Shown: in pieces, positions 2,788 to 28,412 of the stretch
How positions within the stretch are numbered: the first letter of the stretch is position 1
Layout: the number at the start of each line of letters is the position of its first letter
NCBI GenBank assembly: GCA_002269645.1
Contig: NIVC01001137.1
Coordinates: 1-30,005 of the forward strand
DNA length: 30,005 nt
Direction: 5' to 3'
Source of the DNA: Macrostomum lignano
Lineage: Eukaryota
Position numbers and translations under genes: made by a program
The notes under the pieces: model-generated
The model's database searches: none
Told to the model about the DNA's origin: nothing
What the model saw: only the letters and a program-made list of their open reading frames with translations

Positions 2788-2797
2788 AACTTCCAAC

Positions 2798-3175: not shown

Positions 3176-3179
3176 CACT

Positions 3180-3560: not shown

Positions 3561-3744
3561 AATGAACCGAAATAGTGCCCGCCTGCTTGCCTGCCCACAG
3601 CTGCAGCAGACACAGCCTGTTCCCACTTGTAGTTGCATGCCGTGATGCACTTCAATGCCTATATGTGAAGTTTTGTTGTGCTGCACTTTCGTACTTTTAG
3701 TAGCTGTGTGCATACAATTAGCTTAACCATCTGGATGTGATTGA

Positions 3745-4535
<791 letters not shown>

Positions 4536-8254: not shown

Positions 8255-8746
8255 TTACCAATGGACTTTGACAGATATCCTGCGATGTAAAACATGACAT
8301 TCAGGCTTTCTTTTCTGAGGATTCCTTACGTCGCAAGGCCAGGCAATGATATAAGAAATGGATATAAGCGACATCACTCTAGTCTTATTTTCAAACTGAA
8401 TAATCTCCTTCGAGCTGATGTAGTATGGGCCATCTGACATCTGTCGATACCTTTCGAATTGCCTCTCGATGGGATCCGAAAGAAACTTTTCGAGCAAAAC
8501 ATACTGAAAGTGCACCGTAGCAAATAGTCTTGAGCAAAGTTTCGGAATCGCAGAACACGTCTGAATGAATCTACCAAAGGTTTCATTCGTCAAGCAGTTC
8601 TTGCCTGCTGCAGCTGCACGCCAGTTTTGTAGAAATTCGGTGAAGAATGTTAGTAGGTGTTCAAGCTGCCAGAGTTCTCTTGTAATCGGCGGACATTCTG
8701 GCTTTTTTAGCTGCTGACCAGCGATAGGTGTTGGAACATTCAAAAT
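8255..8746 (-). pseudogene. C-terminal fragment of a P-like transposase
   Basis: ILNV...WQLEHL...W...LTNETF...FQYVLLEKFLSDPIERQFERYRQMSDGPYYIS resembles the P/THAP9 C-terminal motif (YVLLGKFQTDPLE.RFG.YRQ.SG.NY.IS, from memory). No ATG; joined directly to the THAP remnant, so the central catalytic region is deleted. Confidence 0.75.
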
Positions 8747-9598: not shown

Positions 9599-9793
9599 CC
9601 AGCACCAGGGGCGCCAGCACCAGGGGCGCCAGCACCAGGGGCGCCAGCACCAGGGGCTTTAGCACCAGGGGCTTTAGCACCAGGGGCTTTAGCACCAGGG
9701 GCTTCAGCACCAGGGGCTTCAGCACCAGGGGCTTCAGCACCAGGGGCGCCAGCACCAGGGGCTTCAGTACCAGGGGCGCCAGCACCAGGGGCG
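9599..9793. repeat. 15-bp minisatellite AGCACCAGGGGC(GCC/TTT/TTC), ~13 copies
   Basis: Read directly. Confidence 0.95.
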
Positions 9794-10151
9794 ACAGAAA
9801 AAATACAATTAAAGATTCTCATTGAGTCATCGAGTCAAGTATTTGTGATAGTAAAAGTTATTTTAAATTTTATTTTATTGGCAGCCAAATCCAGATTTCA
9901 GGTATATCCTAGGGTCTCCTTGATCTCCCTCGAGGTCCTCTGCAAGCCAAAACGCAGGGGCGCTGGAGAATCGATGACTCACTCGGTGAGTGGGGAAGGG
10001 GTCAGAACCCGAAACCCCATTTTTTGTTATCCCCTGTCCCCCCATTCTCCTACCTGCCTGACTTCGCTTCGCCATGCACAATATAGCTTTAGCCTGGTCT
10101 TTGTCTTAAGCATTGAGATGGCAAGCAAAAGAAGTCTGCTTCAACGCAATT

Positions 10152-11419
10152 TGACGCCACTGAAACCAGTTTGGCGCCGCTCAAACTAATTTGGCGCTAC
10201 TCAAACCAGTTTGGCGCCACTGAAACCAGTTTGGCGCCACTTAAACCACTCAAACCAGTTTGGCGCCACTCAAACCAGTTTGGCGCCACTCAAACCAGTT
10301 TGGTGCCACTCAAACCAGTTTGGCGCTTACTCAAACCAGTTTGGCGCTTACTCAAACCAGTTTGGCGCCACTCAAACCAGTTTGGCGCTTACTCAAACCA
10401 GTTTGGCGCCACTCAAACCAGTTTGGCGCTTACTCAAACCAGTTCGGCGCTAACTCAAACCAGTTTGGCGCCACTGAAACCAGTTTGGCGCCACTTAAAC
10501 CACTCAAACCAGTTTGGCGCCACTCAAACCAGTTTGGCGCCACTCAAACCAGTTTGGCGCTTACTCAAACCAGTTTGGCGCTTACTCAAACCAGTTTGGC
10601 GCTTACTCAAACCAGTTTGGTGCCACTCAAACCAGTTTGGCGCTTACTCAAACCAGTTTGGCGCCACTCAAACCAGTTTGGCGCTTACTCAAACCAGTTC
10701 GGCGCTAACTCAAACCAGTTTGGCGCCACTGAAACCAGTTTGGCGCTTACTCAAACCAGTTTTGCGCCATTGAAACCAGTTTGGCGCCACTGAAACCAGT
10801 TTGGCGCCACTCAAACCAGTTTGGCGCCACTGAAACCAGTTTGGTGCCACTCAAACCAGTTTGGCGCCACTCAAACCAGTTTGGCGCCACTCAAACCAGT
10901 TTGGCGCCACTCAAACCAGTTTGGCGCTATTGGTCATTAATTTCTGGTGTTAAAGATTTGCGAGCTCAAACCAGTTCGGCGCTAACTCAAACCAGTTTGG
11001 CGCCACTGAAACCAGTTTGGCGCCACTTAAACCACTCAAACCAGTTTGGCGCCACTCAAACCAGTTTGGCGCCACTCAAACCAGTTTGGCGCTTACTCAA
11101 ACCAGTTTGGCGCTTACTCAAACCAGTTTGGCGCTTACTCAAACCAGTTTGGTGCCACTCAAACCAGTTTGGCGCTTACTCAAACCAGTTTGGCGCCACT
11201 CAAACCAGTTTGGCGCTTACTCAAACCAGTTTGGCGCCACTGAAACCAGTTTGGCGCTTACTCAAACCAGTTTTGCGCCATTGAAACCAGTTTGGCGCCA
11301 CTGAAACCAGTTTGGCGCCACTCAAACCAGTTTGGCGCCACTGAAACCAGTTTGGCGCCACTCAAACCAGTTTGGCGCCACTCAAACCAGTTTGGCGCCA
11401 CTCAAACCAGTTTGGCGCT
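10152..11419 (+). repeat. 20/21-bp minisatellite CTCAAACCAGTTTGGCGCCA, ~60 copies, with higher-order structure
   Basis: Read directly; diagnostic variant CACTTAAACCACTC at 10238, 10492 and 11024. Confidence 0.97.
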
Positions 11420-11864: not shown

Positions 11865-12885
11865 ATATCACCCATCCTCAATCCATTCCATCCCATCCTC
11901 AATCTATCCCATCCTCAATCCATCCCATCCTCAATCTATCCCATCCTCAATCTATCCCATCCTCAATCTATCCCATCCTCGATCCATCCCATCCTCAATC
12001 TATCCCATCCTCAATCATCCCATCCTCAATCTATCCCATCCTCGATCTATCCCACCCTCAATCCATCCCATCCTCGATCCATCCCATCCTCAATCAATCC
12101 CATCCTCAATCTATCCCACCCTCAATCTATCCCACCCTCAATCCATCCCATCCTCGATCCATCCCATCCTCAATCTATCCCACCCTCAATCTATCCCATT
12201 CTCGATCTATCCCATCTCAATCTATCCCATCCTCAATCTATCCCACCCTCAATCTATCCCATTCTCAATCTATCCCATTCTCGATCTATCCCATCCTCAA
12301 TCTATCCCATCCTCAATCTATCCCACCCTCAATCTATCCCATTCTCAATCTATCCCATTCTCAATCTATCCCATCCTCAATCTATCCCATCCTCAATCTA
12401 TCCCACCCTCAATCTATCCCATTCTCGATCTATCCCACCCTAAATCCATCCCATCCTCGATCCATCCCATCCTCAATCTATCCCACCCTCAATCTATCCC
12501 ATTCTCGATCTATCCCACCCTAAATCAATCCCATCCTCAATCTATCCCACCCTCAATCTATCCCACCCTCAATCCATCCCATCCTCGATCCATCCCATCC
12601 TCGATCTATCCCATCCTCAATCTATCCCATCCTCAATCCATCCCATCCTCAATCCATCCCATCCTCAATCTATCCCATCCTCAATCTATCCCATCCTCAA
12701 TCCATCCCATCCTCAATCTATCCCATCCTCGATCTATCCCACCCTCAATCCATCCCATCCTCGATCCATCCCATCCTCGATCTATCCCATCCTCAATCTA
12801 TCCCATCCTCAATCCATCCCATCCTCAATCCATCCCATCCTCAATCTATCCCATCCTCAATCTATCCCATCATCAACCTATCCCA
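11865..12885. repeat. 16-bp minisatellite CCATCCTCAATCTATC with variants
   Basis: Read directly. Confidence 0.97.
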
Positions 12886-13210
12886 TACATCCATACATCC
12901 CATCCATACATGCAGACAAATAATGGTCCTCATTATAGATTCAGTCCTGCAGTGCAGCCCCATTTCCTAAATCGTTTTTTTTCAAACCAACGATTACGTA
13001 TGGAGCTGTCTGCCGCAACATTTCATACTCACTTGCTGCTCTACTTCCGGACATCAGATAGTCTGATGCAGAAAGTTTTCGACTGACAAATGGCAAAAAA
13101 ATTGAATTGCATTTTACTCATCATCCCAGCGTCAGACACCGCAGCAACCAACTCGAATAAACTCGATAAAATCAAAAATAAATGAATAATTTTTTGAGTG
13201 AAGTCGAACA

Positions 13211-13596
13211 GGTTTGAGTGGCGCCAAACTGCTTTGAGTGGCGCCAAACTGGTTTCAGTGGCGCCAAACTGGTTTCAATGGCGTCAAACTGGTTTGAGTA
13301 GCGCCAAACTGGTTTGGCGCCAAACTGGCAATGGCGCCAAACTGGTTTGAGTGGCTCCAAACTGGTTTGAGTGGCTCCAAACTGGTTTGAGTGGCGCCAA
13401 ACTGGTTTGAGTGGCTCCAAACTGGTTTGAGTGGCGCCAAACTGTTTTGAGTGGCGCAAAACTGGTTTGAGTTAGCGCCGAACTGGTTTGAGTAAGCGCC
13501 AAACTGGTTTGAGTGGTTTGAGTGGCGCCAAACTGGTTTGAGTAAGCGCCAAACTGGTTTGAGTTAGCGCCAAACTGGTTTGAGTGGCGCCAAACT
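13211..13596 (-). repeat. Same 20/21-bp family as 10152..11419, in inverted orientation (TTTGAGTGGCGCCAAACTGG)
   Basis: The unit is the exact reverse complement of the 10152 unit; it shares the variants GCTTACTC and TTCGGCGCTAACTC. Confidence 0.97.
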
Positions 13597-14221
13597 GCCA
13601 CGTGATCAAATTGTCGCCTCTCTGCTGGACACTAGCTCAACAGCTTCTTTAATGATCTCAAAGTTCACAATCTAATGAACAGCAAAAATGTTTGCCACAA
13701 AAAATGAAAAGACTCCCGTTAGAAAGCTCTGATTCTCCAATTAGTTATTAATCAATCACACTTCTGTAAAATAACTTTCAACAGAAGTCTCTTGGATCCC
13801 GACCTGATCCTTCGTCAGCCTGGTAAACAAATAAATTTTATGCAAGCGAGCCCGCGTCTACTTAACGAGTAGGAAGACTGGGACATACGAGTACGCCTGT
13901 ACATAAGTTAAGAAATAAAGAACGAAAGTTAGTGTTACTTTCAGTTTTTAAACTATAGCAAGAAAAGTATATTTGTTTATTTGTTTTACTGTCTCTAAAG
14001 TTGATAGCTTAGATTAAATTTTGGGCCTTAGAAAACGTAAAATAATAATATTTGTCTCGTCGAAGTGAACACAGATCACAGAAGGTACCAGTAAAAAGCT
14101 TGTAATGCTTTAATCGAGTAAAAGAGAAATTGTAATCATGTCAGTCAGGTTGAACGTGCCACTTGAAAGTGCTTCAACTGTCATAAGCAGGAAAATTCAC
14201 AAGCTACAAGCAAGCGTTGTT

Positions 14222-15860
14222 TCAATCTGCTGTTGCTGCCCATACTCCAGAAATCTCGGAGCAAGTCGTAGAGTTGGCCGGGTCAACCGTCTCATCCGCC
14301 GTTCTTCGCTTTGTTCGTTGTTGAATCCGTTCCCAGGCAATCAGGCAGCAGTCGTGCAGCAGCTCCAGCAGCTCCAGAGCCGACAGCAGCGACATGCCAA
14401 GGAACAAGCCCAGCAGGCCGCCGACATCCGCAACCAATGAGTTGAAGCTGTACGCCGGAGACAGCCGCACCTCCTGGCTGTGAAGTTGTGCGCCAGATAC
14501 TTCTAAGAATAGTAGTGACTGGCGCACCTGCTCCATTGTGGCATTGCTCACCAGGTAAGAGAAGCCTGGCGTGAGACCGTTCTTCTCTACCTTATACAAT
14601 GCGATGTACTTCTTGAAGTACATCTGCCAATCTCTTTCCGAAGGCCACAGAGCCGACGAATATTCGTAGCTGTAAGTTCTCTGACGACACGGAACCTTGT
14701 TAGCGCAGCGCAGCGTTGCTTTGTACAGCATCATCTCCCTGTCTTCCATTAACCGACTGGTTAGTATTGTGCCGCTCGGGAACTGCGTCAGGTTGAAGCA
14801 CGAAGGCAGAGTTCTGTACTCCCAAGGAAGCGGGTACGGCCAGGGAGTGCAGTTAAACAGCTCCAAGGACATCCGTGCGATCTCTCTGTACCAGCAGTCC
14901 ACGTGGCTGTAGTTGAAGGTTCGTTTGCCCTGTGTGTACGGATCGAAAAAATTGACACTTTTGCTGCTGCTGTCAGCCCCAAGACATCTCGAGCTCACGT
15001 CGGCATCAAAGATGGTGTCCTTCATTTTGATTTTCAGGCGGTGGCTCTGGCCGGGCCCGACGTTCAAGTGGCGTCATGAAGCTGGGGTGCTGGCCTCGAG
15101 GCGTGATGAATATTTCGAATCCGCGAGCCACAGAATAGTCCAAGCCGTGCCTGAAGGTCCAGTCCGAGGGCTTCGGGTTGATGAACGATCCGAATAAAGG
15201 TAGAGCGTCCTGCTCAGTGGAGTTGTCGAATGAATGAGGCAGCGGAGGGTCCAGGAACAGGCCAATCTGAAAGTAATTCGATGGATTTTGCAGGGATCGG
15301 ATTTCCTTGTCGGTGAAATCGATTGTGAAGCAGTTGAGGTACAGCGGGTGTCTGAAGGTGCTAATTTTCGGAGTCGATTTTCCTTCAAAATAGTACATGA
15401 AGACCAGTTGGCTGGCCCTGAGCGCCATCTTGTCGAAGAGGAACTGGAATGGCAGGGTGTTAATGAGCCGGATTGCGTAGTTCTCAGGCAGAAAGTCGTC
15501 AGCTACGAGCTCCTTGTAGACTCCAGCGAGGCTGCGGTTGACCAGAGCTCGATACCGGCTTAGCAACGCATTGTCTTCAGCGCTGAGCGTGACCGAGTAG
15601 CTACCGGAGATGGGCTTCTCTTTGCAGATGTGCAGCTCGGGAAAGACAAAGTCCAGCTCATTGGCTCTAATGGTGGTTTTGAGCTCGGCTTTGGCAAAGC
15701 TGCTGTAAGTCTCAACTATTCGCACCACGCACAGGATGACGGAGGCCAAGAAGACGAGCAGCCAGAGGACTCTGACATAGAGAGGCCGTTCGCCTGCGAT
15801 ACGGGACAAACTGTGGGTCGTGGCCTCTTTGGCGTACTTTGCGATGGCGGTTGACAGCAT
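14222..15860 (-). CDS. DEG/ENaC family channel subunit 1, intronless, one frameshift near 15068-15085 (~545 aa if repaired)
   Basis: TTHS, TM1, FPELHIC, NCFT, WPS, DVGGLLGLFLGMSLLSALE (TM2 with GxS). Colinear with the intact paralog at 20070..21692. Start chosen by homology (MLS..); an in-frame upstream ATG exists at 15923. Confidence 0.88.
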
Positions 15861-16874
15861 GGCTGAGCTGAGAGGGTTGAGCGCTTCAAACTCAATGAGA
15901 GCAGTGTTGCAGTTACCGGACATGTTTGAGAGTTTTATCCCCTGTGGGATCCAACTCGAACTCCGTATGTTTGTCAAGTACTAACTCTAACTGGATCAAG
16001 CTTCAGTCATCGGTAAACAGCCTTGCTACATATCGTATAGTGACGTCTTGATTGACAGCTGGACAGTCAAAGATCCATGGCTGTTAAGCTCGGAGATCAA
16101 TTTAGAAAGCTGAAGTGTTGTCTCTGTGTAAATTAGCTATCAATTTTGCCAGTAGCTTTTTTTCTGGGATTAAAATCCTAATCGGGATCGAATCCATCTA
16201 GCAAAGTCTTCATTAAATAATGTATGCAACGTAGCTCATGGATGACTCTTATGGCGAGTCATTTTTACACGACAGCTAGCTAATATACTGGTTAATTTTC
16301 TCTGGTCAAATAAAGTGGCAGGAAATGGTTGCTCTTCTTAGCAAACAGTGCGTGCCAAACAAGCAGATTTCTGACTAATTTTTGAAGAGGATGTTGAGTC
16401 AGTTGCGGTAGATGAAGCGCAGTTTACGCTCACGCTCACTATCGCAGGCCAGGACTCGAATTGATTTATCTCTGAGACCTGAGGCCCGAAGGCTTCCCCA
16501 CAAGGGGGCCGAAAGGTCGAAACCCATCATTATCTACAACGGAGTAGAAATTTGTTTTAACTTAAAACCAGCAGTCGATGCCATTGCTGGATTTCTTCGC
16601 GTAGCATTTGGTCCAAATAGGCATGGTAATATTCACAGGCATACGAGTACTGATATGCCACAGAGGGCTGAAGCAGCAAAGTTCATTGAGGAATTTTCAA
16701 GATTCGTCTGTCTGCATCGAAATCATAATATCATAATAGGAGCCTAACTACAGCAAAAGGACAGGAATTAACAATAACTGGAAAAGAATTTTTCTAAATA
16801 GATTACCAGTTTATAAAGATAGGAGAATTTAAAACAACAGAAAAGTTAGTAAAAGTTGCGAAGCTTCTCTAAGC

Positions 16875-18433
16875 TCAATTAGAACGTGCCATATCGGTTG
16901 AACTGGCATCCGCCGTCTTCCTTGTCGCTGTCCTCGTCTGCAGCCGTCGACACGCAATCAGGCCGCAGTCGTGCAGCAGCTCCAGCACTTCCAGCAGCGA
17001 CAGCAGCGACATGCCCAAGAACAGGCCCAGGATGCCGCCAATGTCAGCTATCAGCGAGTTGAACGAGTAGGCATACGACAGGCGAACCTCCTGGCACATA
17101 TACTTGTCCGCAAACATCTCCAGGTAGACAAGCGACTCTTGGACCTGACGAAATGTTGCATTGTGGACCAGCTGTCGAAAACCGGGCGTTGGGCCGCCCT
17201 GATCCAGCAGGTTAGTCGCAATGTGCTCTCGCAGATAGCCAGACCAGTCTTTTTCTGTCGGCCAGAGACTCGTCGAATAGTCGAAAGTGTAAGAACGTCT
17301 GCGGCACGGCACGTGTTTAGCACACTTGGCTGTGGCAAATCCAACAACTCTCTCCCTCTCCTTCATTACCGTCTTGTTCAGGACTAGGCTTCTAGGAAAC
17401 TGTGTCAGGTTGAAGCACATGGGCGATCGTCTGAGATCCCAAGGCAAAGTCATTTGCCAGGGAACGCAGTTGAACTTCTCCATTGACTGTCGGACGATTT
17501 CACGGTAACCGCATTCGTCTAAGCTGAATTTAACCTTGTACACTCCCATTGTGTATGGATCGAGCAATTCCTCGGATTTATCATCTCCAAAGCATCTGTC
17601 TCCTTTGAGGTCTTCTTCGTAGACAGTGTCTTGCATCTTTAGCGACAGTCGATGGCTCTGCCCCGGTCCAATCTGCAGTCTGGCGTCTGAAGCCGACGGA
17701 TGCTGACCTCTGGGCGTTATTAAAACTGAGAACCCAGTCGGCATTGAAAATCCTAGCCCGAACAGCAAATTCCAATGCACCGGTGAAACCCCCGAGTTGT
17801 CAAATGCCACTGGAGGCTCCAGCAAGTCAAGAAATAGGCCCATCTGTATGTATGAAACCGGGTTGCTCAATACCTCGTAGTCCGACTCCGTAAAGTTTAG
17901 AGTGAAACAGTTAAGAAGAGCGCTGTGCCTCTGAATTCGAAATTTAGGCGTCGGGTCTCCGTCGAACAAAAACTGAACGGCTAGCTGGTTGACCCGACGC
18001 CCCAGTTTGTCAGACAGAAACTGATAGGGCAGAGTGTTGACCAGACGGGCAAAATAGGTGTAATGTGCGAAGTTCGAATCACCGAATTCGATTCCAGCCA
18101 TGCTGTCGCTGACCAAACGCTTGTTTTTTAGAGATTAGCTCAACGTCTTCGGGACTTAAAATGCCGTAATAGCTGCCTGAAATTGGATTTTCATTGCAGA
18201 TGTAAATGTCTGGGAATTCAAACTTGACTTGATCTGCTCGAATGGTAGTTTTTCAAATCGCCTCGTTGAAAAGTGTGGTAAAACTCGCCGATTCTTGTAC
18301 AGCACAGACACAGAAATGTTAGGAACGCAAGCAGCCAGAAGGCTTTGATGTAGACTGGTCTGTCGCTCGACAGCCGAGCGAGACTGTGAGTCGTAGCGTC
18401 CGTGGCAAAGTTTTTCAGCGCTTCTGACAGCAT
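16875..18433 (-). CDS. DEG/ENaC family channel subunit 2, intronless, two +1 frameshifts in A-runs (518 aa if repaired)
   Basis: Removing one base from each of T5 (18249..18253) and T6 (18124..18129) gives MLSEALKNF...LKTTIRADQVKFEFPDIYICNENPISGSYYGILSPEDVELISKNKRLVSDS..., continuous with ORF 16875..18116; TM2 DIGGILGLFLGMSLLSLLE. Confidence 0.88.
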
Positions 18434-18895
18434 TGTTGATCTGAGTTGATTCTGCCTGGCTGCAGCATGGGACTATTGATTTTATCAATAATGATCTCTG
18501 TTTGACTAGATGCATTAACTGGGCGTTTTTAGCTCGGTAAATATGACTTGTGCGATCCGGTTGCATTAATCATTTTCTCTCTCTTTAAACAAATTTTAAT
18601 CGATCGTCTAATCAATTCGAAGCTGAACTAAGCCAAGAGACTTGCGTGTCCTGTTTAATTTGAGCAAGCTCAGCGTAAGCTCGCGACTGTAGAGTATATT
18701 AGATTATCTGGATTATCAAGCAAAAGCGTGAAATTTGCCACGTCAAAAATTTGCGCAGATAGAAGAATAAATAGAAAGATTTTATCATCTAAAGCAGATA
18801 TTCAGAGGCTGGGGCAGTTTAAAAAAAGATTTACTATTGAAGAAAGCCGATACAAAAATCATTCTACAGGTTTAGTCACTTAAGGCAGAAGATGC

Positions 18896-19710
18896 GACCT
18901 CGACATTTCACAACCTCGACATTTCACAACCTCGACATTTCACAACCTCGACATTTCACAACCTCGACATTTCACAACCTCGACATTTCACAACCTCGAC
19001 ATTTCACAACCTCGACATTTCACAACCTCGACATTTCACAACCTCGACATTTCACAACCTCGACATTTCACAACCTCGACATTTCACAACCTCGACATTT
19101 CACAACCTCGACATTTCACAACCTCGACATTTCACAACCTCGACATTTCACAACCTCGACATTTCACAACCTCGACATTTCACAACCTCGACATTTCACA
19201 ACCTCGACATTTCACAACCTCGACATTTCACAACCTCGACATTTCACAACCTCGACATTTCACAACCTCGACATTTCACAACCTCGACATTTCACAACCT
19301 CGACATTTCACAACCTCGACATTTCATAACCTCGACATTTCACAACCTCGACATTTCACAACCTCGACATTTCACAACCTCGACATTTCACAACCTCGAC
19401 ATTTCACAACCTCGACATTTCACAACCTCGACATTTCACAACCTCGACATTTCACAACCTCGACATTTCACAACCTCGACATTTCACAACCTCGACATTT
19501 CACAACCTCGACATTTCACAACCTCGACATTTCACAACCTCGACATTTCACAACCTCGACATTTCACAACCTCGACATTTCACAACCTCGACATTTCACA
19601 ACCTCGACATTTCACAACCTCGACATTTCACAACCTCGACATTTCACAACCTCGACATTTCACAACCTCGACATTTCACAACCTCGACATTTCACAACCT
19701 CGACATTTCA
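18896..19710. repeat. Near-perfect 16-bp tandem array ACCTCGACATTTCACA, ~51 copies
   Basis: Read directly; one internal variant seen (TTCATAAC, ~19327). Confidence 0.98.
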
Positions 19711-20069
19711 AAAGCTCGCAATTCATTTTTTAAGTTTCGAGTCATTTTTCAGGAACTCGAAACTTCATATGGTAGAAAAATAAAAAAAGGTTTGATCACT
19801 CTCACACAAGCTCGAAATGTCACGTTATCAAAATACTATTGCTAGTCACTTCTGCTCGCTTAAACTTTCAAACTAATTGGATGAAACTCAAAAATTGTGT
19901 TATGAAATTAGAGTAGTTGCTTTAAAGTTTAACTCAGGACAGGTAAAGCAGAAGGTTGCTATACACTCGAAACTCGCGTCAAGTCAACGGTCGGTTTAAT
20001 ACGCTTCAAAGTGCTTAAACTGTCATTAGTTATTCCCAATGAGATTTTCCTAATTAACTGAGCGTTGCT

Positions 20070-21692
20070 TCATTCTGCTTTTGCTGCCCATACTCCAGAA
20101 ATCTCGGAGCAAGTCGTAGAGTTGGCCACGTCAACGGTCTCATCCGCCGTTCTTCGCTTTGTTCGTTGTTGAACCCGTTGCCAGGCAATCAGGCAGCAGT
20201 CGTGTAGCAGCTCCAGCAGCTCCAGAGCCGACAGCAGCGACATGCCAAGGAACAAACCCAGCAGGCCGCCGACATTCGCAACCAATGCATCGAAACTGTA
20301 GTCGAGTGACAGCAACACCAAATTGCTGCGGAATTCAGCCGATGAGATTTCCAGCAGCAGTAGAGAATCGCGAACCTGCTGCATAGTGGCATTGTCCACT
20401 AGGTAGGAGAGTCCGGGGGTTGGTCCGTTGGCCATCGAAATCTTCTCTAATATTTGTTCTCGCAAATACGATCTCCAAACCCGTTCGGTCGGCCAAAGGC
20501 TGGATGAATAAGTGTAGCTGTATGATCTCTGCCGACAGGCGGCCATTTCGGAGCACTTTCTGGTCGCGTTGAAAAGTATTCGCTCTCTTTCAAGTATCCC
20601 CTCTCTGGAGACGTTTAAACTAGCTGGGAACTGCGTTATGTTGAAGCAGTACGGCGCCCATCTGTGTTCCCAGGGAAGCGGAATTCGCTCTAAAACGCAG
20701 CCGAATCGCTCCATGGATAGTCTGACAATTTCTCGGTACCAGCACACGATCGGAGTGTTTCTGAACTTCTGCCTGTCGCCAGAGTAGGGGTTCAGAAAGG
20801 CCCCAGTATTGGCATTGCTTCTTCCAAAGCATCTGTCACTCACTTCGTCGTCGTAGACGGTTTCCTGCATGCTGATTGACAGCTTGTGGTGCTGGCCTGG
20901 TCCAATGCGAAAAGAATGACCCCACCTGCTGGGATACTCATACTGAGGCACAATGAACAGTTGGATGCCGCTGGCTTGAAAAAAATCGACGCCGAAGCTG
21001 AAACTCCAGTCAACTGGTTTTACGTTGATCCTCGAGCTACCGTAGTAAAACAAGTCCTGCTCAGTAGAGTTGTCAAATGGCTTTGGAAGCAGCGGGTCCA
21101 AGAACAAGCCGATCTGCATGTAGCTGGTAGGACTTTGCAGAGCTCGAATGTCCGACTCCGTCAAATCTAGCTTGAAACAGTTCAAATGGTCGGCATGCCT
21201 CAGCGTGCGAAGCTGAGGCGTGAAATTTCCGTTGAAGTAGTACGACACAACCAGCTGGTCGGATTTGTGCGCCATTTTGTCGGCTAGAAAGTTGAACGGC
21301 AGCGTGTTCACTAATCTGATGTTGTAGTTCCCAACCCTATTTTGGTGCGGAAATCCTTCGATGCTTGCGTTGACCAGCTGGCGGTAACGACTCAGCAGTT
21401 CGGCGTCCGCGGCGCTGAGCATCACCGAGTAACTACCAGAAATTGGAATCTCATTGCAAAAGTAGATATCCGGGAATCTAAAATCAAGCTCATTGGCTCT
21501 AAAAGTCGTCTTTAGACTGTTTTTAGAGTAGCTTTCAAAAGCGTTGCGCATACGAATTGAGCAGAGAGTCACAGACGCCAGAAGCGTGACAAACCAGAAG
21601 GCCCTGACGTAGCCGGGTCTGCCACCAGCCAGCCTGGAGAGGCAGTGGGTGCTGGCCTCGCCTGCGTATTTAGTCAGGGCTTCGGACAGCAT
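20070..21692 (-). CDS. DEG/ENaC (amiloride-sensitive Na channel family) subunit 3, intact single-exon 540 aa
   Basis: ATG to TGA ORF with STHC, TM1 (AFWFVTLLASVTLC), FPDIYFCN, NCFK, Cys-containing thumb, LWPTE and TM2 NVGGLLGLFLGMSLLSALE. Confidence 0.95.
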   Translation of the reverse strand: MLSEALTKYAGEASTHCLSRLAGGRPGYVRAFWFVTLLASVTLCSIRMRNAFESYSKNSLKTTFRANELDFRFPDIYFCNEIPISGSYSVMLSAADAELLSRYRQLVNASIEGFPHQNRVGNYNIRLVNTLPFNFLADKMAHKSDQLVVSYYFNGNFTPQLRTLRHADHLNCFKLDLTESDIRALQSPTSYMQIGLFLDPLLPKPFDNSTEQDLFYYGSSRINVKPVDWSFSFGVDFFQASGIQLFIVPQYEYPSRWGHSFRIGPGQHHKLSISMQETVYDDEVSDRCFGRSNANTGAFLNPYSGDRQKFRNTPIVCWYREIVRLSMERFGCVLERIPLPWEHRWAPYCFNITQFPASLNVSREGILERERILFNATRKCSEMAACRQRSYSYTYSSSLWPTERVWRSYLREQILEKISMANGPTPGLSYLVDNATMQQVRDSLLLLEISSAEFRSNLVLLSLDYSFDALVANVGGLLGLFLGMSLLSALELLELLHDCCLIAWQRVQQRTKRRTADETVDVANSTTCSEISGVWAAKAE

Positions 21693-22652
21693 CTCCCCCT
21701 GTCTGCAGGTACAGACGATCCTTACCTAACAGTGAAGTTTTTAGCAACTTCCCTCATTTTATGCTGATATCGCTAATGGTGTTTGTTGAAAGCAAATCGT
21801 TTTAGCCATTGTCAAATTTATTGGTTGAGCAAACTACTCTGTAAGTATTATCTCTTTATTGCCGAATAAACATTGTATAAAAAATCTTTGCAAAAAACGG
21901 TCGGCTCTACTGGAAGTAGCGAGCTAGACATTTACTTCGAAATCTTGCAGTATAACTTGCAGTACGAATGATATGTCGGATTACTTACTTGCACTTTATA
22001 TTCTATAGTAAACTACATGCATGACATCAATTTAGACTAGTCTGCACACTCTCTCTCCTGAACAAGACAGATTTATTGGGTTGCCAGCCTTTCTGGCTTG
22101 CCTAAAAAACCCCAATTTTCTGATAATTTATGACCACACACGAGTCCATATTAGCCTAGCAGAAGATATTTGCTCGAACTAAATGAATGACCAATTATCC
22201 CGATTTGTCTTTAGATGAAACAATTTTGTAAGAGCACAAACGTTTTCTCGTGATGAGTTTTCGTAAATTTAAGACTAAAATAGCCCAGAGATTAGACCCA
22301 GAAGCTGCAACAGGTACGGCTGCATGCAAAGTCAAGTACAGCTACCAACTTTATTGCAACAGTGCACACTAAAGCCAAATGGTTAACAAGCAAACAGAAT
22401 AAGGGTAAACGAAACGCAAGGCTACTCTCTGAGAAGTGTAGAGAGTGGGACTAGGAGAAAAAGCAGAAATAGGGGATGCAAGCCAAGCTCATTGGCTGCT
22501 CCCGAGACGGAGCACTCAGCAGCAGCAGCAGCAGCAGCCCTGTCCCTCTCAAAAGCAGAAAGCCGCTTCAAAACACGCAGCAGAAACTTCTCTTCTTTTT
22601 AATCCCAGCAGGTTGAAGCCAGTTTAGGGAGGGGGGCGGTTCGCGAAACGAA

Positions 22653-23777
22653 ATGCGTCGACCTCAGCTCCAGTCGTTGCCGCGACTTCGCCGACTCATC
22701 GATCGGGGCCGACGTCGCGGACGACGCAAGCTTCGTTTGCTGACGCCGCCGCCCTACAATTACAAGTCGGATTGCGCCGGAGCGCAGAAGCTGTTCTACA
22801 TCGGCTTTGTCCTGTCCTCAATCGCAAGCGTTGTCTTTCTGATCAGCTTCGTGTTCAACAGCGGCAGCGGTGGTGCCAAAGCTGGGGGAGCCGACGAGCT
22901 GTCTGATGGCAACTCGACTCTGGCGACCCCGCTGCCTGACGCTCGGCCTTCGACTGCTGGCAGCGGAAGACGACAGCTGGGCCTGTTTGAGACCTTGGCT
23001 CTGCTGTGCTCAGCTTTCGGTCTCTGCTTAATTGCCGGAGTCTTCTTGTGTGGCCTGTACGTTACACGACGCATGAAAGACATGGATGAGGAGAAGCTCA
23101 TAGCGACAGGAGGTGCAGGGTCCTCCAGACAAGGCTGCTGGGACGCTGATGACGAGGATGACGACTGCGAGGATGACGCGACTCAGACAACGGAGACTCC
23201 GGCTGGTGAACTGTCGTCCTACTCGATTGCGTCCGCTGTGGGGAGTGCGGCTCAGCAGGTTCGTTCTGGGCTGGTAAATCAGTCAGTCAGTCAGTCAGTC
23301 AGTCAGTCAGTCAGTCAGTCAGTCAGTCAGTCAGTCAGTCAGTCAGTCAGTCAGTCAGTCAGTCAGTCAGTCAGTCAGTCAGTCAGTCAGTCAGTCCATC
23401 ACTCACTCACTCAGAGGGCCGGACTCTGCACCGAGTGCGGCTGCCGCAGGACTTCCGATCGTCAGGGCGCTGACGACGAGCAGCAGGTGGAAGATCTTGA
23501 CGAAGATCTCGACTTAGACGACGAAGAGGACGACGAAGATCTGGACAATACTCGAGCGACCCGAACGTCAGTCGACTCAAACGAATCCGAAATGAAATCT
23601 TCGAATAATCCTGCCGAGGCTGCTGTACGTCAAGCGTTGAACTCGAACGTTCCTCGTCGCCTGCGACGATGCACCTGCGCTCAGATCAGCACCGTGTCCA
23701 GGCTGTCAGATCGGTTCGCTTGTCGAGACTCCGCGTCAGTTTTTGAAACCTCTGACCAGTCTATTGCGTTCTTCTGA
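22653..23777 (+). CDS. Unknown 2-TM membrane protein with an N-terminal PPPY motif and acidic tail (374 aa unspliced; 327 aa if 23274..23414 is an intron)
   Basis: ATG-initiated GC-rich ORF with two hydrophobic segments (LFYIGFVLSSIASVVFLISFVF; LALLCSAFGLCLIAGVFLCGLYV), D/E tracts and Cys motifs. I do not recognise the family. Confidence 0.65.
   Translation: MRRPQLQSLPRLRRLIDRGRRRGRRKLRLLTPPPYNYKSDCAGAQKLFYIGFVLSSIASVVFLISFVFNSGSGGAKAGGADELSDGNSTLATPLPDARPSTAGSGRRQLGLFETLALLCSAFGLCLIAGVFLCGLYVTRRMKDMDEEKLIATGGAGSSRQGCWDADDEDDDCEDDATQTTETPAGELSSYSIASAVGSAAQQVRSGLVNQSVSQSVSQSVSQSVSQSVSQSVSQSVSQSVSQSVSQSVHHSLTQRAGLCTECGCRRTSDRQGADDEQQVEDLDEDLDLDDEEDDEDLDNTRATRTSVDSNESEMKSSNNPAEAAVRQALNSNVPRRLRRCTCAQISTVSRLSDRFACRDSASVFETSDQSIAFF
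23274..23414 (+). other. Probable 141-nt phase-0 intron filled by ~29 copies of TCAG
   Basis: CTG|gtaaat ... cactcactcag|AGG; length is 3x47 and it contains no in-frame stop. Confidence 0.55.
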
Positions 23778-23959
23778 CACGATAGCGGTCTGTCTCGGAT
23801 GTTTTGAAGTAGCTAATTGATTTTATGACTAAACAGACCTGATGGCTTGGAGACAATACGTACTGTTTACTGATCCCTGATGTACACAGTTTCGACTGAG
23901 AAGCTACCACTGTTTTATGCACTTAGATACAGCTTGTGTTTATAACTGAATGCTTTTAT

Positions 23960-24880
23960 TGTGTTTAAGACTGGCTGTTTAATGTGTTTTTATATGACTG
24001 CTTAATTTGTTTATGACTAAATCTTTGATGTTTTTATGGCTGGATGTTTGATGTGTTTATGACTGAATGTTTGATGTGTTTATGACTGGCTGCTTGGTGT
24101 GTTTATGACTGAATGTTTGATGTGTTTATGACTGAATGTTTGATGTGTTTATGACTGGCTGTTTGATCTGTTTGATGTGTTTATGACTGGCTGTTTGATC
24201 TGTTTGATGTGTTTATGACTGGCTGCTTGGTGTGTTTATGACTGGATGTTTGATGTGTTTATGACTGGATTTTTGATGTGTTTATGACTGGATGTTTGAT
24301 GTGTTTATGACTGGATGTTTGATGTGTTTATGACTGGATGTTTGATGTGTTTATGACTGGATGTTTGATGTGTTTATGACTGGCTGCTTGATGTGTTTAT
24401 GACTGGCTGTTTGATCTGTTTGATGTGTTTATGACCGGATTTTTGATGTGTTTATGACTGGCTGTTTGATCTGTTTGATGTGTTTATGACCGGATTTTTT
24501 ATGTGTTTATGACTGGCTGCTTGGTGTGTTTATGACTGAATGTTTGATGTGTTTATGACCGGATGTTTGATGTGTTTATGACTGGCTGTTTGATCTGTTT
24601 GATGTGTTTATGACTGGCTGTTTGATCTGTTTGATGTGTTTATGACTGGCTGTTTGATGTGTTTATGACTGGCTGCTTGGTGTGTTTATGACTGGCTGCT
24701 TGGTGTGTTTATGACTGAATGTTTGATGTGTTTATGACTGGCTGCTTGATGTGTTTATGACTGGATGTTTGATGTGTTTATGACTGGATGTTTGATGTGT
24801 TTATGACTGGATTTTTGATGTGTTTATGACTGGCTGTTTCAATTGTTGATTTATGAATGCTTAATTTGTTTATGACTGGA
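23960..24880. repeat. 23-bp satellite, subtype TGATGTGTTTATGACTGGATGTT
   Basis: Read directly. Confidence 0.93.
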
Positions 24881-24884
24881 TTCT

Positions 24885-25652
24885 TGATGTGTTTACATAA
24901 GAATGCTTGATGTGTTTACATAAGAATGCTTGATGTGTTTACATATGAATGCTTGATGTGTTTACATTACATACCAGGGTAAGAATGCTTGATGTGTTTA
25001 CGTATGAATGCTTGATGTGTTTACATAAGAATGCTTGATGTGTTTACATATGAATGCTTGATGTGTTTACATTACATAAGAATGCTTGATGTGTTTACAT
25101 AAGAATGCTTGATGTGTTTACATATGAATGTTTGATGTGTTTACATTACATAAGAATGCTTGATGTGTTTACATAAGAATGCTTGATGTGTTTACATAAG
25201 AATGCTTGATGTGTTTACATAAGAATGCTTGATGTGTTTACATAAGAATGCTTGATGTGTTTACATATGAATGCTTGATGTGTTTACATAAGAATGCTTG
25301 ATGTGTTTACATATGAATGCTTGATGTGTTTACATTACATAAGAATGCTTGATGTGTTTACATATGAATGCTTGATGTGTTTACATATGAATGCTTGATG
25401 TGTTTACATAAGAATGCTTGATGTGTTTACATATGAATGCTTGATGTGTTTACATTACATAAGAATGCTTGATGTGTTTACATAAGAATGCTTGATGTGT
25501 TTACATATGAATGCTTGATGTGTTTACATTACATAAGAATGCTTGATGTGTTTACATAAGAATGCTTGATGTGTTTACATATGAATGCTTGATGTGTTTA
25601 CATAAGAATGCTTGATGTGTTTACATATGAATGCTTGATGTGTTTACATATG
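24885..25652. repeat. 23-bp satellite, related subtype TGATGTGTTTACATA(A/T)GAATGCT, with 28-bp ACATTACAT variants
   Basis: Read directly. Confidence 0.95.
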
Positions 25653-26124
25653 ATTTTATTATTTTATTATTTTATTCTTAGCCATGGTGTGTTTATCTCT
25701 ACTCCGTAAATAATTATTGATCGATTGGTTAGCATCATCAAGATGCTGTAACTAGCAAAAGAATGTCGCCAACATCAAAGAGATTCTGTAGATAAAAATT
25801 AGTTCAGCACAAGCCATCATTCATGATCAAGCAAAGATTTCTCAGAGTGATCCGCAGAGCAGAGTAAGAAGTCAAAGCCGGGGTTGGGTACTCTTGGGAA
25901 ATCTCGATTGGAGATCTCGGACAACAGAAAAGAACCAAAGCATCCATTTTTGTTCAACTTCTTCCTTCCAAGCATGCTTTTTTCCCTTAGGGTTAGGGTT
26001 GTCTTGGAATTCTATTTGTTCGTGCGATTATGGCATTTCCCAATGCTCAGGCGTACCAAGTATTGATTATTTAGTCCTCTGAGTACTGGGTAGCTGTGCC
26101 ACTCTGTATTTCGTAAGGCTTCTC

Positions 26125-26575
26125 TTCCCTCCCTCTCATTCTTCTCACCCTCTCTCCCCTCCATGTCATTCTTCTCACCCTCTCTCCCCTCCCTCCCATT
26201 CTTCTCACCCTCTCTCCCCTCCCTCCCATTCTTCTCACCCTCTCTCCCCTCCCTCCCATTCTTCTCACCCTCTCTCCCCTCCCTCCCATTCTTCTCACCC
26301 TCTCTCCCCTCCCTCCCATTCTTCTCACCCTCTCTTCCGTCCTCTCATTCTTCTCACCCTCTCTCCCCTCCCTCCCATTCTTCTCACCCTCTCTTCCGTC
26401 CTCTCATTCTTCTCACCCTCTCTCCCCTCCCTCTCATTCGTCTCACCCTCTCTCCCCTCCATCTCATTCGTCTCACCCTCTCTCCCCTCCCTCCCATTCT
26501 TCTCACCCTCTCTCCCCTCCCTCCCATTCTTCTCACCCTCTCTCCCCTCCCTCTCGTTCGTCTCATCCTCTCCTT
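26125..26575. repeat. 30-bp CT-rich minisatellite CTTCTCACCCTCTCTCCCCTCCCTCCCATT
   Basis: Read directly. Confidence 0.95.
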
Positions 26576-27061
26576 CACTCTCTCATCTAAATTCCTTTTC
26601 CTTCCATCTTTTCTCTGTGTAAATCTGTATTCCCTTACCTTCTTTCATCCTGATATTACTGATCAAAAGTCTGGAATCACTGCCGCTAAGAACTCAGTTT
26701 ATTTGAGCAGCAATATTTTCCTGTTGTAAAATTTAACAGCACCAAACCATAAAAAGCTTATTAAGTATGATAGCTCAATCATTTTCTAGCAACCACAGGG
26801 CTAGATATAAGGCCAAGAGACAGACGCATGAGACCAGCGGAGTGTATCCAGAATCATGTTATTTGATCGAGTACCTCATCATTCGCTCAATCGCTCATTT
26901 TACTATCTGAATCTGTGGCAGAAGATGATCAGCTTTCCAGATTTGATGCATTAACTGGCTTAAGAGAACTAATTTCCTGTTTGACTAGAGAAAATACGTT
27001 TTTTGTATGATGAGCACTGTCTGCTTCCAGGGTCTGCCAAAGACCTCTGATAACTCTATGG

Positions 27062-28412
27062 GTCTCCCAATGACCTTGGTTTGGTCAAGGGTTTCCCAAT
27101 AACCTTGGTTTGGTCAAGGGTTTCCCAAATAACCTTGGTTTGGTCAAGGATTTCCCAATAACCTTGGTTTGGTCAAGGATTTTCCAGTGACCTTGGTTTG
27201 GTCTAGGGTTTCCCAATGACTTTGGTTTGATCAAGGGTTTTCCAATGACCTTGGTTTGGTCAAGGGTTTCCCAATAACCTTGGTTTGGTCAAGGGTTTCC
27301 CAAATAACCTTGGTTTGGTCAAGGGTTTCCCAATAACCTTGGTTTGGTCAAGGATTTTCCAGTGACCTTGGTTTGGTCTAGGGTTTCCCAATGACTTTGG
27401 TTTGATCAAGGCTTTTCCAATGACCTTGGTTTGGTCAAGGGTTTCCCAATGACCTTGGTTTGGTCAAGGATTTTCCAGTGACCTTGGTTTGGTCAAGGGT
27501 TTCCCAATGACCTTGGTTTGGTCAAGGATTTTCCAGTGACCTTGGTTTGGTCAAGGGTTTCCCAATAACCTTGGTTTGGTCAAGGGTTTCCCAATAACCT
27601 TGGTTTGGTCAAGGATTTTCCAGTGACCTTGGTTTGGTCTAGGGTTTCCCAATGACTTTGGTTTGATCAAGGGTTTTCCAATGACCTTGGTTTGGTCAAG
27701 GGTTTCCCAATGACCTTGGTTTGGTCAAGGATTTCCCAATAACTTTGGTTTGGTCAAGGGTTTTCCCAATGACCTTGGTTTGGTCAAGGGTTTCCCAATG
27801 ACCTTGGTTTGGTCAAGGATTTTCCAGTGACCTTGGTTTGGTCAAGGGTTTCCCAATGACCTTGGTTTAGTCAAGGGTTTCCCAATGACCTTGGTTTGGT
27901 CAAGGAATTTTTCCCAATAACCTTGGTTTGGTCAAGGGTTTCCCAATGACCTTGGTTTGGTCAAGGGTTTCCCAATGACCTTGGTTTGGTCAAGGGTTTC
28001 CCAATAACCTTGGTTTGGTCAAGGATTTCCCAATGACCTTGGTTTGGTCAAGGGTTTCCCAATAACCTTGGTTTGGTTAAGGGTTTCCCAATGACCTTGG
28101 TTTGGTCAAGGGTTTCCCAATGACCTCGGTTTGTTCAAGGGTTTCCAAATGACCTTGGTTTGGTCAAGGGTTTTCCAATGACCTTGGTTTGGTCAAGGGT
28201 TTCCCAATAACCTTGGTTTGGTCAAGGATTTCCCAATGACCTTGGTTTGGTCAAGGGTTTCCCAATAACCTTGGTTTGGTTAAGGGTTTCCCAATGACCT
28301 TGGTTTGGTCAAGGGTTTCCCAATGACCTCGGTTTGTTCAAGGGTTTCCAAATGACCTTGGTTTGGTCAAGGGTTTTCCAATGACTTTGGTTTGGTGAAG
28401 GGTTTCCCAATA
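27062..28412. repeat. 29-bp satellite GACCTTGGTTTGGTCAAGGGTTTCCCAAT, ~46 copies
   Basis: Read directly; head-to-tail, no spacers. Confidence 0.97.

What the first reader, a model, noticed from the sequence alone, without database searches (positions are those of the whole stretch)
14222..21692. Tandem trio of intronless, divergent DEG/ENaC genes
Seen: three co-oriented ~1.55-1.65 kb single-exon genes, all starting MLS(E/T)A, separated by ~1.0 and ~1.6 kb, colinear without introns but clearly diverged in the ectodomain. The neighbouring caveolin has normal introns. Known: DEG/ENaC channels are trimers, are usually encoded by multi-intron genes, and lineage-specific expansions (pickpocket, degenerins) serve chemo- and mechanosensation. 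The WP(S/T) motif before TM2 points to the ENaC/FaNaC/degenerin side rather than ASIC. Inference: a retroposed ancestor duplicated in tandem, giving a lineage-specific sensory channel subfamily. The three may be co-expressed, form a heterotrimer, or (if the host trans-splices) be co-transcribed.
Basis: partly seen in the sequence, partly recalled or inferred. Interest (0 to 1): 0.7.

Follow-up and report, generated by a model that had tools for sequence, protein, structure and literature searches.

The report
Tandem flatworm DEG/ENaC genes, two broken
Three neighbouring, intron-free sodium-channel (DEG/ENaC) genes really are there, in the flatworm Macrostomum lignano, but only one has an unbroken reading frame and their closest relatives are also almost intron-free, so this is an ordinary old tandem gene family and not a special retrogene cluster.

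Summary
Three co-oriented minus-strand DEG/ENaC (Pfam ASC) paralogs lie at 14222-15860 (A), 16875-18433 (B) and 20070-21692 (C). All start MLS(T/E)A, the spacers are 1014 and 1636 bp, and no introns are needed. A carries one frameshift; B carries two, each an extra A in an A-run.

The window is from Macrostomum lignano: a neighbouring ORF is 100% identical to a UniRef M. lignano protein. The trio is monophyletic, with saturated synonymous sites and dN/dS of 0.15-0.28. It nests among M. lignano DEG/ENaCs that are only about 25% identical. Six of those relatives have 0-2 short introns and one has none, so the intronless state is close to normal for this clade and retroposition is not required.

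A and C share a roughly 230-bp gene-conversion tract over TM2 and the C-terminal tail. A and B show no extra decay compared with C, so their frameshifts are either recent or assembly errors. No protein matching the trio exists in any searched collection, although M. lignano proteomes are included. Heterotrimer formation and co-transcription remain untested.

Verdict: new members of a known family, of low to moderate interest.

The parts
20070..21692 (-). Gene C: intact, intronless DEG/ENaC ORF of 540 aa. TM1 is about residues 27-57 and TM2 about 467-500. It has the G483-M-S485 filter motif and H16-C17 in place of the HG motif.
   Evidence: ORF. Pfam ASC match 1-455/455, E 1.6e-41. AF2 model pLDDT 86, pTM 0.80. 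Foldseek top hit is FaNaC1 8on9, E 7.6e-26. Motifs.
16875..18433 (-). Gene B: DEG/ENaC paralog read in three frames (18433-18251, 18252-18127, about 18125-16875). Conceptual product is 518 aa, 49% identical to C.
   Evidence: tblastn; sequence; Pfam ASC on the 413-aa piece, E 1.1e-31; alignments.
18249..18253 (-). Frameshift 1 of gene B: an A5 run where A4 would keep the frame (..TTG AAA A|CT ACC..).
18124..18129 (-). Frameshift 2 of gene B: an A6 run where A5 would keep the frame (..TCT AAA AA|C AAG CGT..).
14222..15860 (-). Gene A: DEG/ENaC paralog in two frames (15860-~15072 and ~15070-14222). Conceptual product is about 545 aa, 57% identical to C.
   Evidence: (Pfam ASC E 2.1e-16 and 2.7e-27 for the two pieces).
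15068..15072 (-). Frameshift of gene A (net +1 or -2 nt) in ...ATGACGCCAC|TTGAAC..., not in a homopolymer. As written the frame stops 21 codons later.
14212..14440 (-). Gene-conversion tract, A side: TM2, the C-terminal tail and the first ~10 nt of the 3'UTR. It is at least 93% identical to C 20060-20288, against about 60-67% for the rest of the gene.
   Evidence: pS 0.06 in the last 50 codons against about 0.7 elsewhere; alignment; sliding identity.
20060..20288 (-). Gene-conversion tract, C side.
18897..19718 (.). 16-nt minisatellite (51 copies) filling half of the C-to-B spacer. Without it the spacer is about 814 bp.
21693..22652 (.). 960-bp divergent spacer between gene C and the plus-strand ORF 22653-23777. 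It is a candidate promoter region for C, with CTGCAG at -16 from the ATG.

Best explanation
This is an old tandem array of three paralogous DEG/ENaC channel-subunit genes in the genome of the free-living flatworm Macrostomum lignano.

Origin:
- The array arose by local (unequal crossing-over type) duplication of an ancestor that was already intronless or nearly so, as is usual in this flatworm DEG/ENaC clade.
- Each copy then evolved for a long time under purifying selection as a subunit of a trimeric, FaNaC/ASIC-fold cation channel.
- More recently, A and C exchanged their TM2 and C-terminal tail by gene conversion.

Present state:
- In this sequence only C can encode a full subunit.
- A has one frameshift and B has two. 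These are either very young inactivating mutations, which is plausible in a hidden polyploid with redundant copies, or residual assembly errors.

Basis of each step:
- Shown: family identity, tandem arrangement, monophyly, past purifying selection, the conversion tract, the frame breaks, and the intron-poor state of relatives.
- Inferred: the duplication mechanism, channel function and ligand, and the cause and age of the frameshifts.
For: Identity and fold:
- Pfam ASC matches and PDB sequence hits to FaNaC1, ASIC5, ASIC1 and ENaC.
- AF2 model with pLDDT 86.
- Foldseek hits FaNaC, ASIC and ENaC at E 1e-26 to 1e-19.
- TM2 GxS motif, FP motif, WPx motif and 8 conserved ectodomain cysteines.

Species:
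- The neighbouring ORF is 100% identical to M. lignano A0A1I8GPF8.
- Two minisatellites are shared with M. lignano contigs.

Age and selection:
- pS is about 0.6-0.73 (saturated) and dN/dS is 0.275, 0.18 and 0.15.
- The trio is monophyletic in 100/100 bootstraps, inside a group of M. lignano proteins.

Intron state of relatives: 0-2 short introns in six M. lignano genes, with a shared intron position lost in P0003.

Conversion tract.

Frameshifts and lack of decay:
- Frame breaks are documented.
- A, B and C are equidistant from outgroups (0.746, 0.752, 0.747).
- They keep 31, 32 and 31 of 41 family-conserved columns, so A and B are not long-dead.
Against: - No expression evidence of any kind could be obtained.
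- No protein matching A, B or C at 50% identity or better is present among 15 billion predicted proteins, although M. lignano annotations are included. Even C may therefore be silent or very weakly expressed.
- The HG gating motif is HC, HS and HS in the trio, so normal channel gating is not assured.
- Duplication from an already intronless ancestor cannot be distinguished from an ancient retroposition followed by duplication, because any poly(A) tail or target-site duplication would long since have been erased.
Confidence: 0.8

Rival explanations
1. All three genes are intact and functional in the animal. The three frameshifts are assembly or consensus errors, or minor alleles, and the trio encodes three co-operating subunits.
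For: - Both B frameshifts are +1 in A-runs, the classic long-read indel error.
- There are no in-frame stops or other lesions.
- A and B are as conserved as C: equal distance to outgroups, and 31-32 of 41 conserved columns kept.
- dN/dS is 0.15-0.28.
Against: - The A frameshift is not in a homopolymer.
- Longer runs (T7 in C, T6 in A) are in frame, as are 10 of the 12 runs of 5 or more bases in the four ORFs checked.
- No matching protein or transcript-derived ORF exists in any collection searched.
- Differences inside the young A/C conversion tract are mostly non-synonymous (6 codons against 3).
Confidence: 0.35
2. A retroposed (processed-mRNA-derived) ancestor was inserted here and then duplicated in tandem. 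The intronless state is a retrogene signature.
For: - All three copies have no introns.
- The neighbouring caveolin has introns.
- Macrostomum genes average 3-5 introns (PMC10468722).
- RT-mediated events are the usual way introns are lost.
Against: - Relatives in the same clade have only 0-2 introns, and one lost all of them independently.
- No A-rich tail or flanking duplications lie downstream of any copy.
- No multi-exon parent is known: the nearest proteins are about 25% identical.
Confidence: 0.2
3. The three genes form one SL-resolved polycistronic unit (an operon) transcribed from the promoter upstream of C.
For: - The genes share orientation.
- M. lignano has operons and counts repeat-adjusted spacers under 1 kb (PMC8629364).
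- The C-to-B spacer is about 814 bp once the minisatellite is subtracted.
- YTNCAG acceptor-like CTGCAG lies at -16 (C) and -32 (B).
- There is no AATAAA or ATTAAA in the whole B-to-A spacer.
Against: - Operon spacers peak at about 100 bp, whereas here they are 814-1636 and 1014 bp.
- C has ATTAAA at +69 and A has its own signals.
- A has no YTNCAG within 250 nt of its ATG.
- The absence of a poly(A) signal in 1 kb is not significant (about 1.3 expected).
- Trans-spliced genes in M. lignano are mainly conserved or stem-cell genes.
- No SL reads were available.
Confidence: 0.1
4. The whole array is a silent relic. None of the three is expressed any more, and C has simply not yet acquired a lesion.
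For: - Two of the three copies are broken.
- The trio is absent from both M. lignano protein sets and from all transcript-derived ORFs in the collections, while the next gene (22653-23777) is annotated.
- The HG motif is lost.
Against: - C keeps a 540-codon ORF.
- All three keep the family-invariant residues, and long-term dN/dS is low.
- Sensory-cell-restricted channel genes are often missed by whole-animal RNA-seq annotation.
Confidence: 0.2

Closest known systems
Uncharacterised Macrostomum lignano DEG/ENaC genes (e.g. PAA81733.1, PAA90405.1, PAA58710.1, UniRef A0A1I8GD92, A0A1I8GGQ7)
   Same: - Same species.
- Best hits in an exhaustive profile search (E 2e-62 to 1e-40).
- They cluster with the trio in the NJ tree.
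- Similar size of about 520-590 aa.
- Intron-poor, with 0-2 short introns.
- Same TM2 GG.LG.(Y/F).G.S motif.
   Different: - Only about 25% identical.
- They keep the HG motif, whereas the trio has HC or HS.
- None was seen in tandem within the 17-22 kb fetched around three of them.
- They are annotated, whereas the trio is not.
FMRFamide-gated sodium channels (FaNaC; Malacoceros FaNaC1 PDB 8on7-8ona, Aplysia FaNaC 7yvb)
   Same: - Best solved-structure match by sequence (E 7.7e-10) and by fold (E 7.6e-26, TM 0.64-0.67).
- WPx motif and general architecture.
   Different: - 16-17% identity.
- The trio groups with flatworm genes, not with the mollusc FaNaC-like hit.
- M. lignano channels of a FaNaC-adjacent branch gave no response to FMRFa or other peptides in oocytes (PMC9234716). 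It is not known whether those belong to the same clade.
- Peptide gating was not tested here.
Acid-sensing ion channels / ENaC (ASIC1, ASIC5/BASIC, ENaC beta/gamma)
   Same: Same fold (Foldseek E 1e-21 to 1e-19) and the same TM2 G-x-S filter and pre-TM2 GG motif.
   Different: - Under 20% identity.
- The vertebrate genes are multi-exon (established knowledge).
- The trio has W-P where ASIC has I-P. That comparison comes from my own recollection of the ASIC1 sequence.
- The trio lacks three cysteine pairs that are common in the family.
Lineage-specific tandem DEG/ENaC expansions (Drosophila pickpocket clusters, C. elegans degenerin-like genes)
   Same: Local duplication of divergent subunit genes, with probable sensory or heteromeric roles (established knowledge).
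   Different: It occurs in a different phylum, two of the three copies are frame-broken, and there are no expression or functional data.

Membership tests
DEG/ENaC superfamily (Pfam PF00858 ASC) | Full-length match to the ASC profile above the gathering score | tested here: met
   C scores 143.3 bits (cut-off 23.6) over profile positions 1-455/455. The pieces of A and B score 60-111 bits.
DEG/ENaC superfamily (Pfam PF00858 ASC) | Two transmembrane helices flanking a large cysteine-containing ectodomain, with a fold like solved ASIC, ENaC or FaNaC structures | tested here: met
   The AF2 model (pLDDT 86, pTM 0.80) has helices at 27-57 and 467-516. Foldseek matches FaNaC1, ASIC1, ASIC5 and ENaC at E 1e-26 to 1e-19.
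DEG/ENaC superfamily (Pfam PF00858 ASC) | TM2 selectivity-filter G/S-x-S motif and pre-TM2 GG.LG motif | tested here: met
   VGGLLGLFLGMSLLS is present in all three copies. G475, G476, G479, G483, S485 and E491 are near-invariant in 80 sequences.
DEG/ENaC superfamily (Pfam PF00858 ASC) | N-terminal His-Gly (HG) gating motif | tested here: not met
   The motif is H-C in C and H-S in A and B, against HG in 34 of 49 aligned relatives. His is kept and Gly is lost. Other family members (HS, HA, NG, QG) also deviate, so this does not exclude membership.
DEG/ENaC superfamily (Pfam PF00858 ASC) | Conserved ectodomain cysteines (disulfide scaffold) | tested here: inconclusive
   Eight cysteines are kept (79, 172, 288, 317, 332, 349, 380, 386). 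Six positions that are Cys in 61-91% of relatives are not Cys in any copy.
DEG/ENaC superfamily (Pfam PF00858 ASC) | Trimeric, amiloride-sensitive Na+-selective channel activity | not testable with these tools
   This needs heterologous expression and electrophysiology.
FaNaC (peptide-gated) subfamily | Phylogenetic placement inside the FaNaC clade | tested here: not met
   In the NJ tree the trio groups with M. lignano proteins, away from the Mercenaria FaNaC-like protein. The tree is distance-based, with few named references.
FaNaC (peptide-gated) subfamily | Activation by FMRFamide or related peptides | not testable with these tools
   Only literature is available: three M. lignano channels near the FaNaC clade were unresponsive (PMC9234716).
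Processed retrogene | Intronless copy of a multi-exon parent gene | tested here: not met
   The copies are intronless, but no parent exists. The nearest proteins are about 25% identical and themselves have 0-2 introns.
Processed retrogene | Poly(A) remnant and target-site duplications | tested here: not met
   None was found in the 500 nt downstream of each stop codon. They are expected to be erased at this age (pS saturated), so this is weak evidence.
M. lignano SL trans-spliced operon (criteria of PMC8629364) | Same orientation and a repeat-adjusted spacer under 1 kb | tested here: inconclusive
   The C-to-B spacer is 1636 bp, or about 814 bp adjusted, which meets the criterion. The B-to-A spacer is 1014 bp with no array found, which just misses it. 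Both are far from the 100-bp mode.
M. lignano SL trans-spliced operon (criteria of PMC8629364) | SL-containing reads at an acceptor upstream of each downstream gene | not testable with these tools
   Only motifs could be checked: CTGCAG at -32 (B) and -16 (C), and none within 250 nt for A.

The most novel reading that the evidence does not exclude
The trio is an unannotated, Macrostomum-specific DEG/ENaC subfamily with an altered gating motif (HG changed to HC or HS) and a reduced disulfide scaffold. Its three subunits would all be intact in vivo, co-transcribed from one promoter, resolved by SL trans-splicing, and assembled into a dedicated heterotrimeric sensory channel. That would be an 'operon' encoding the three subunits of one channel.
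Probability: 0.06. Interest if true: 0.55.

Novelty: new member of a known kind. Interest (0 to 1): 0.22.

Why it matters
If the genes, or at least C, are expressed, they add an unannotated and very divergent branch to the large DEG/ENaC repertoire of a flatworm laboratory model. That branch has a naturally altered HG gating motif and fewer disulfides, which could interest channel biophysicists. The array is also a small, clean example of intron loss, tandem duplication, gene conversion and possible post-polyploidy gene decay. It does not overturn anything: divergent lineage-specific DEG/ENaC clusters in Platyhelminthes are already described (bioRxiv 10.1101/2022.06.28.497943).

Tried and rejected
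- Word-indexed homology search with C found nothing. The same search with the ORF at 8255-8743 also found nothing, and a chimeric multi-ORF query timed out.
- Exact-product look-ups for C, the ORF at 22653-23777, P0165 and the truncated ORFs of A and B found no contig. A second assembly of this locus could therefore not be fetched to check the frameshifts.
- Rfam found no RNA family in the window. The M. lignano SL sequence is not in the window.
- I first suspected that the ORF at 8255-8743 was a THAP9 or P-element transposase remnant. Pfam gave no support, so I dropped the idea.
- Two further caveolin-like first exons (2786-3178 and 6705-~7100) resemble the 'NRDP..IN.H.KV' end of caveolin exon 1. 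They have no Pfam hit and no recognisable second exon.
- I considered tiny introns as an explanation for the frame changes and rejected it. The frames abut or overlap with no spare sequence and no GT..AG.
- I considered processed pseudogenes and rejected that. The copies are in tandem and co-oriented, are each other's closest relatives, and show dN/dS well below 1.
- Counting homopolymers to separate assembly error from mutation was not discriminating: 2 of 12 runs of 5 or more bases are affected, both in B, with p of about 0.27 under a uniform error rate.
- A first tree run timed out, and a Kimura correction failed at these distances. The final tree uses Poisson distances.


Full report
**What is in the sequence**

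The minus strand of 14222-21692 carries three paralogous DEG/ENaC genes.

| Gene | Coordinates | Length | First residues |
|---|---|---|---|
| C | 20070-21692 | 1623 nt | MLSEA |
| B | 16875-18433 | 1559 nt | MLSEA |
| A | 14222-15860 | 1639 nt | MLSTA |

- The spacers are 1636 bp (C to B) and 1014 bp (B to A).
- C is a single uninterrupted 540-codon ORF. It matches Pfam ASC (PF00858) end to end (1-455/455, E 1.6e-41). The pieces of A and B match the corresponding parts of the profile.
- tblastn of C against the window shows that A and B are colinear with C, with no gaps that would call for introns.

- In A the frame changes at about 15068-15072 (…TTC ATG ACG CCA C|TTG AAC GTC…). This is not a homopolymer, and the net change is +1 or -2 nt.
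- In B both changes are one extra A in an A-run: A5 at 18249-18253 and A6 at 18124-18129.
- There is no spare sequence and no GT..AG at these points, so they are frameshifts and not mini-introns.
- With the frames joined conceptually, A is 57% and B 49% identical to C.

**Whose genome**

- The N-terminal 200 residues of the divergently oriented neighbour ORF (22653-23777, plus strand) are 100% identical to UniRef A0A1I8GPF8, 'Transmembrane protein', of Macrostomum lignano. That model differs only by splicing out the in-frame (TCAG)n microsatellite.
- Two minisatellites of the window recur in M. lignano contigs fetched for other reasons. One is a 15-mer at 9600-9797 (about 90-93% identical) and the other a 24-mer at 5122-5501 (76%).
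- The window is therefore M. lignano. This free-living flatworm is a hidden polyploid (PMC10468722). It trans-splices 30% of its genes and has 15% in operons (PMC8629364).

**Family membership**

- The best PDB sequence match is Malacoceros FaNaC1 (E 7.7e-10), followed by ASIC5, ASIC1, ppk26 and ENaC.
- An AlphaFold2 model of C, built on an 80-sequence alignment, has pLDDT 86 and pTM 0.80. TM helices lie at about 27-57 and 467-516, and there is one disordered loop (205-237).
- Foldseek returns FaNaC1 (E 7.6e-26, TM about 0.65), then Aplysia FaNaC, ASIC1, ASIC5 and ENaC.
- The TM2 GG.LG.F.GMS motif, the post-TM1 FP motif, the WP(S/T) motif and eight ectodomain cysteines are present in all three copies.

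Two departures are shared by all three copies and therefore predate the duplications.

- The N-terminal HG gating motif is H-C (in C) or H-S (in A and B), where 34 of 49 relatives have HG.
- Six positions that are cysteine in 61-91% of relatives, probably three disulfide pairs, are not cysteine in any copy.

**Relatives and history**

- An exhaustive profile search of 1.84 billion cluster representatives gave 2513 hits. The best scored only 228 bits.
- All named hits down to E of about 1e-24 are M. lignano proteins. Unnamed Logan and ENA sequences follow, then a mollusc FaNaC-like protein at 1e-19.
- Identity to the M. lignano relatives is about 25%.
- In a neighbour-joining tree of 52 sequences the trio is monophyletic (100/100). 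A and C pair together (99/100), and the trio sits with the M. lignano group.
- Pairwise Nei-Gojobori values show saturated synonymous sites (pS 0.61-0.73) and dN/dS of 0.275 (A-C), 0.18 (A-B) and 0.15 (B-C).
- The duplications are therefore old, and every copy spent most of its history under purifying selection.

The exception is the 3' end.

- From A 14440 / C 20288 to about 10 nt past the stop codons, A and C are at least 93% identical, against about 60-67% elsewhere.
- This is a gene-conversion tract of about 230 bp covering TM2 and the cytoplasmic tail.
- It also inflates the A+C grouping, because outside it the three copies are nearly equidistant.
- Of the differences accumulated since the conversion, six codons are non-synonymous and three synonymous.

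**Intronless state**

I fetched the genomic loci of six M. lignano relatives and mapped the proteins back.

| Relative | Introns |
|---|---|
| P0003 | 0 |
| P0006 | 1 (about 75-90 nt) |
| P0007 | 1 |
| P0155 | 1 |
| P0001 | 2 |
| P0162 | 2 |

- The second intron of P0001 and the intron of P0006 fall at the same alignment position. P0003, the sister of P0001, lacks it, so P0003 lost its introns independently.
- Macrostomum genes average 3-5 introns, so the whole clade is intron-poor.
- No A-rich tail follows any stop codon, and no multi-exon parent exists in the searched proteomes.
- An ancient retroposition cannot be excluded, but nothing requires it.

**Are A and B dead?**

- A, B and C are equally distant from the seven M. 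lignano relatives (0.746, 0.752, 0.747).
- They retain 31, 32 and 31 of the 41 columns that are at least 70% conserved among relatives.
- All family-wide near-invariant residues are intact in all three, and there are no other stops.
- The frameshifts are therefore recent or artefactual.
- For artefact: both B shifts are +1 in A-runs.
- For real mutation: the shift in A is not in a homopolymer, and longer runs elsewhere (T7 in C, T6 in A) are in frame.
- The counts do not discriminate. I could not obtain a second assembly of this locus.
- My estimate is that the shift in A is more likely real than not, and that B is about even.
- Recent decay of redundant copies would fit a hidden polyploid. 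That is an inference.

**Expression and co-transcription**

- No protein at 50% identity or better to the trio exists in the 15-billion-protein collections. These collections do hold two M. lignano annotations, including the gene next door. This is absence of evidence, but it points to low or no expression in whole-animal data.
- For a polycistron:
  - The genes share orientation.
  - The C-to-B spacer shrinks to about 814 bp when the 822-bp 16-mer array at 18897-19718 is removed. That is under the 1-kb repeat-adjusted threshold used for M. lignano operons.
  - CTGCAG, which fits the YTNCAG acceptor motif, lies at -16 (C) and -32 (B).
  - The B-to-A spacer has no AATAAA or ATTAAA, although only about 1.3 would be expected by chance.
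- Against a polycistron:
  - Operon spacers peak at about 100 bp.
  - C has ATTAAA at +69 and A has its own signals.
  - A has no acceptor motif within 250 nt.
- Sequence alone cannot settle the question.

**Verdict**

It is a lineage-specific tandem DEG/ENaC subfamily. The retrogene inference meets its own refutation test, and the heterotrimer and operon ideas are untested and weakened.
- This is a new, unannotated set of members of a known family, in an organism already known to have divergent DEG/ENaC clusters.
- Interest is low to moderate.

Noticed in passing
window 22653-23777 (+): A 374-aa ORF with two predicted hydrophobic segments and acidic tracts, no Pfam hit, divergent from gene C. 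It is 100% identical to M. lignano UniRef A0A1I8GPF8, except that the UniRef model splices out an in-frame (TCAG)34 microsatellite (23279-23414) that would encode (SVSQ)n. Either the coding microsatellite is real or it has been modelled as an intron.
   Followed up: partly
window 162-594 (-), 2786-3178 (-), 6705-~7100 (-): One caveolin gene is confirmed: exon 1, an intron of about 88 nt (GTGAC..CAG), then exon 2, with Pfam Caveolin E 1.1e-12. It runs off the window start. Two more ORFs end in a caveolin-exon-1-like 'D(L/I)(V/L)(N/T)RD...IN.H.KV' motif, which suggests a tandem caveolin-like array. They have no Pfam hit and no recognisable second exon.
   Followed up: partly
genes A, B, C: residues 16-17 (C: window ~21642-21647): The near-universal DEG/ENaC His-Gly gating motif is His-Cys (C) or His-Ser (A, B) in all three copies. 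A Gly-to-Ser change at this motif in human beta-ENaC is, from my own knowledge, a known loss-of-function disease mutation. Six positions that are Cys in most relatives (gene C positions 151, 157 (gap), 321, 330, 361, 382) are not Cys in any copy.
   Followed up: partly
window 10150-11418 and 13207-13597, flanking 11890-12905: Two arrays of the same 20-nt satellite (TTTGGCGCCACTCAAACCAG) lie in opposite orientation and flank a 1-kb array of a 16-nt satellite. This is a large inverted-repeat arrangement of minisatellites just downstream of gene A.
   Followed up: no
whole window (e.g. 3744-4524, 5122-5509, 7616-8058, 9600-9792, 18897-19718, 23935-25653, 26121-26572, 27060-28411): The window is extremely dense in micro- and minisatellites: TRF returned 21 rows scoring 200 or more, some overlapping. 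At least two unit types (a 15-mer at 9600-9797 and a 24-mer at 5122-5501) recur on unrelated M. lignano contigs (L001), so they are dispersed satellite families.
   Followed up: partly
window 8255-8743 (-): A 162-aa ORF with no homolog in the 5.8-billion-protein search and no Pfam family. I first suspected a transposase remnant, but this is unsupported.
   Followed up: yes
L001 8001-9704; L002 10001-11807; L003 10001-12387 (M. lignano contigs): M. lignano DEG/ENaC relatives show recurrent intron loss. P0003 is fully intronless, although its sister P0001 has two introns, one at a position shared with P0006.
   Followed up: yes
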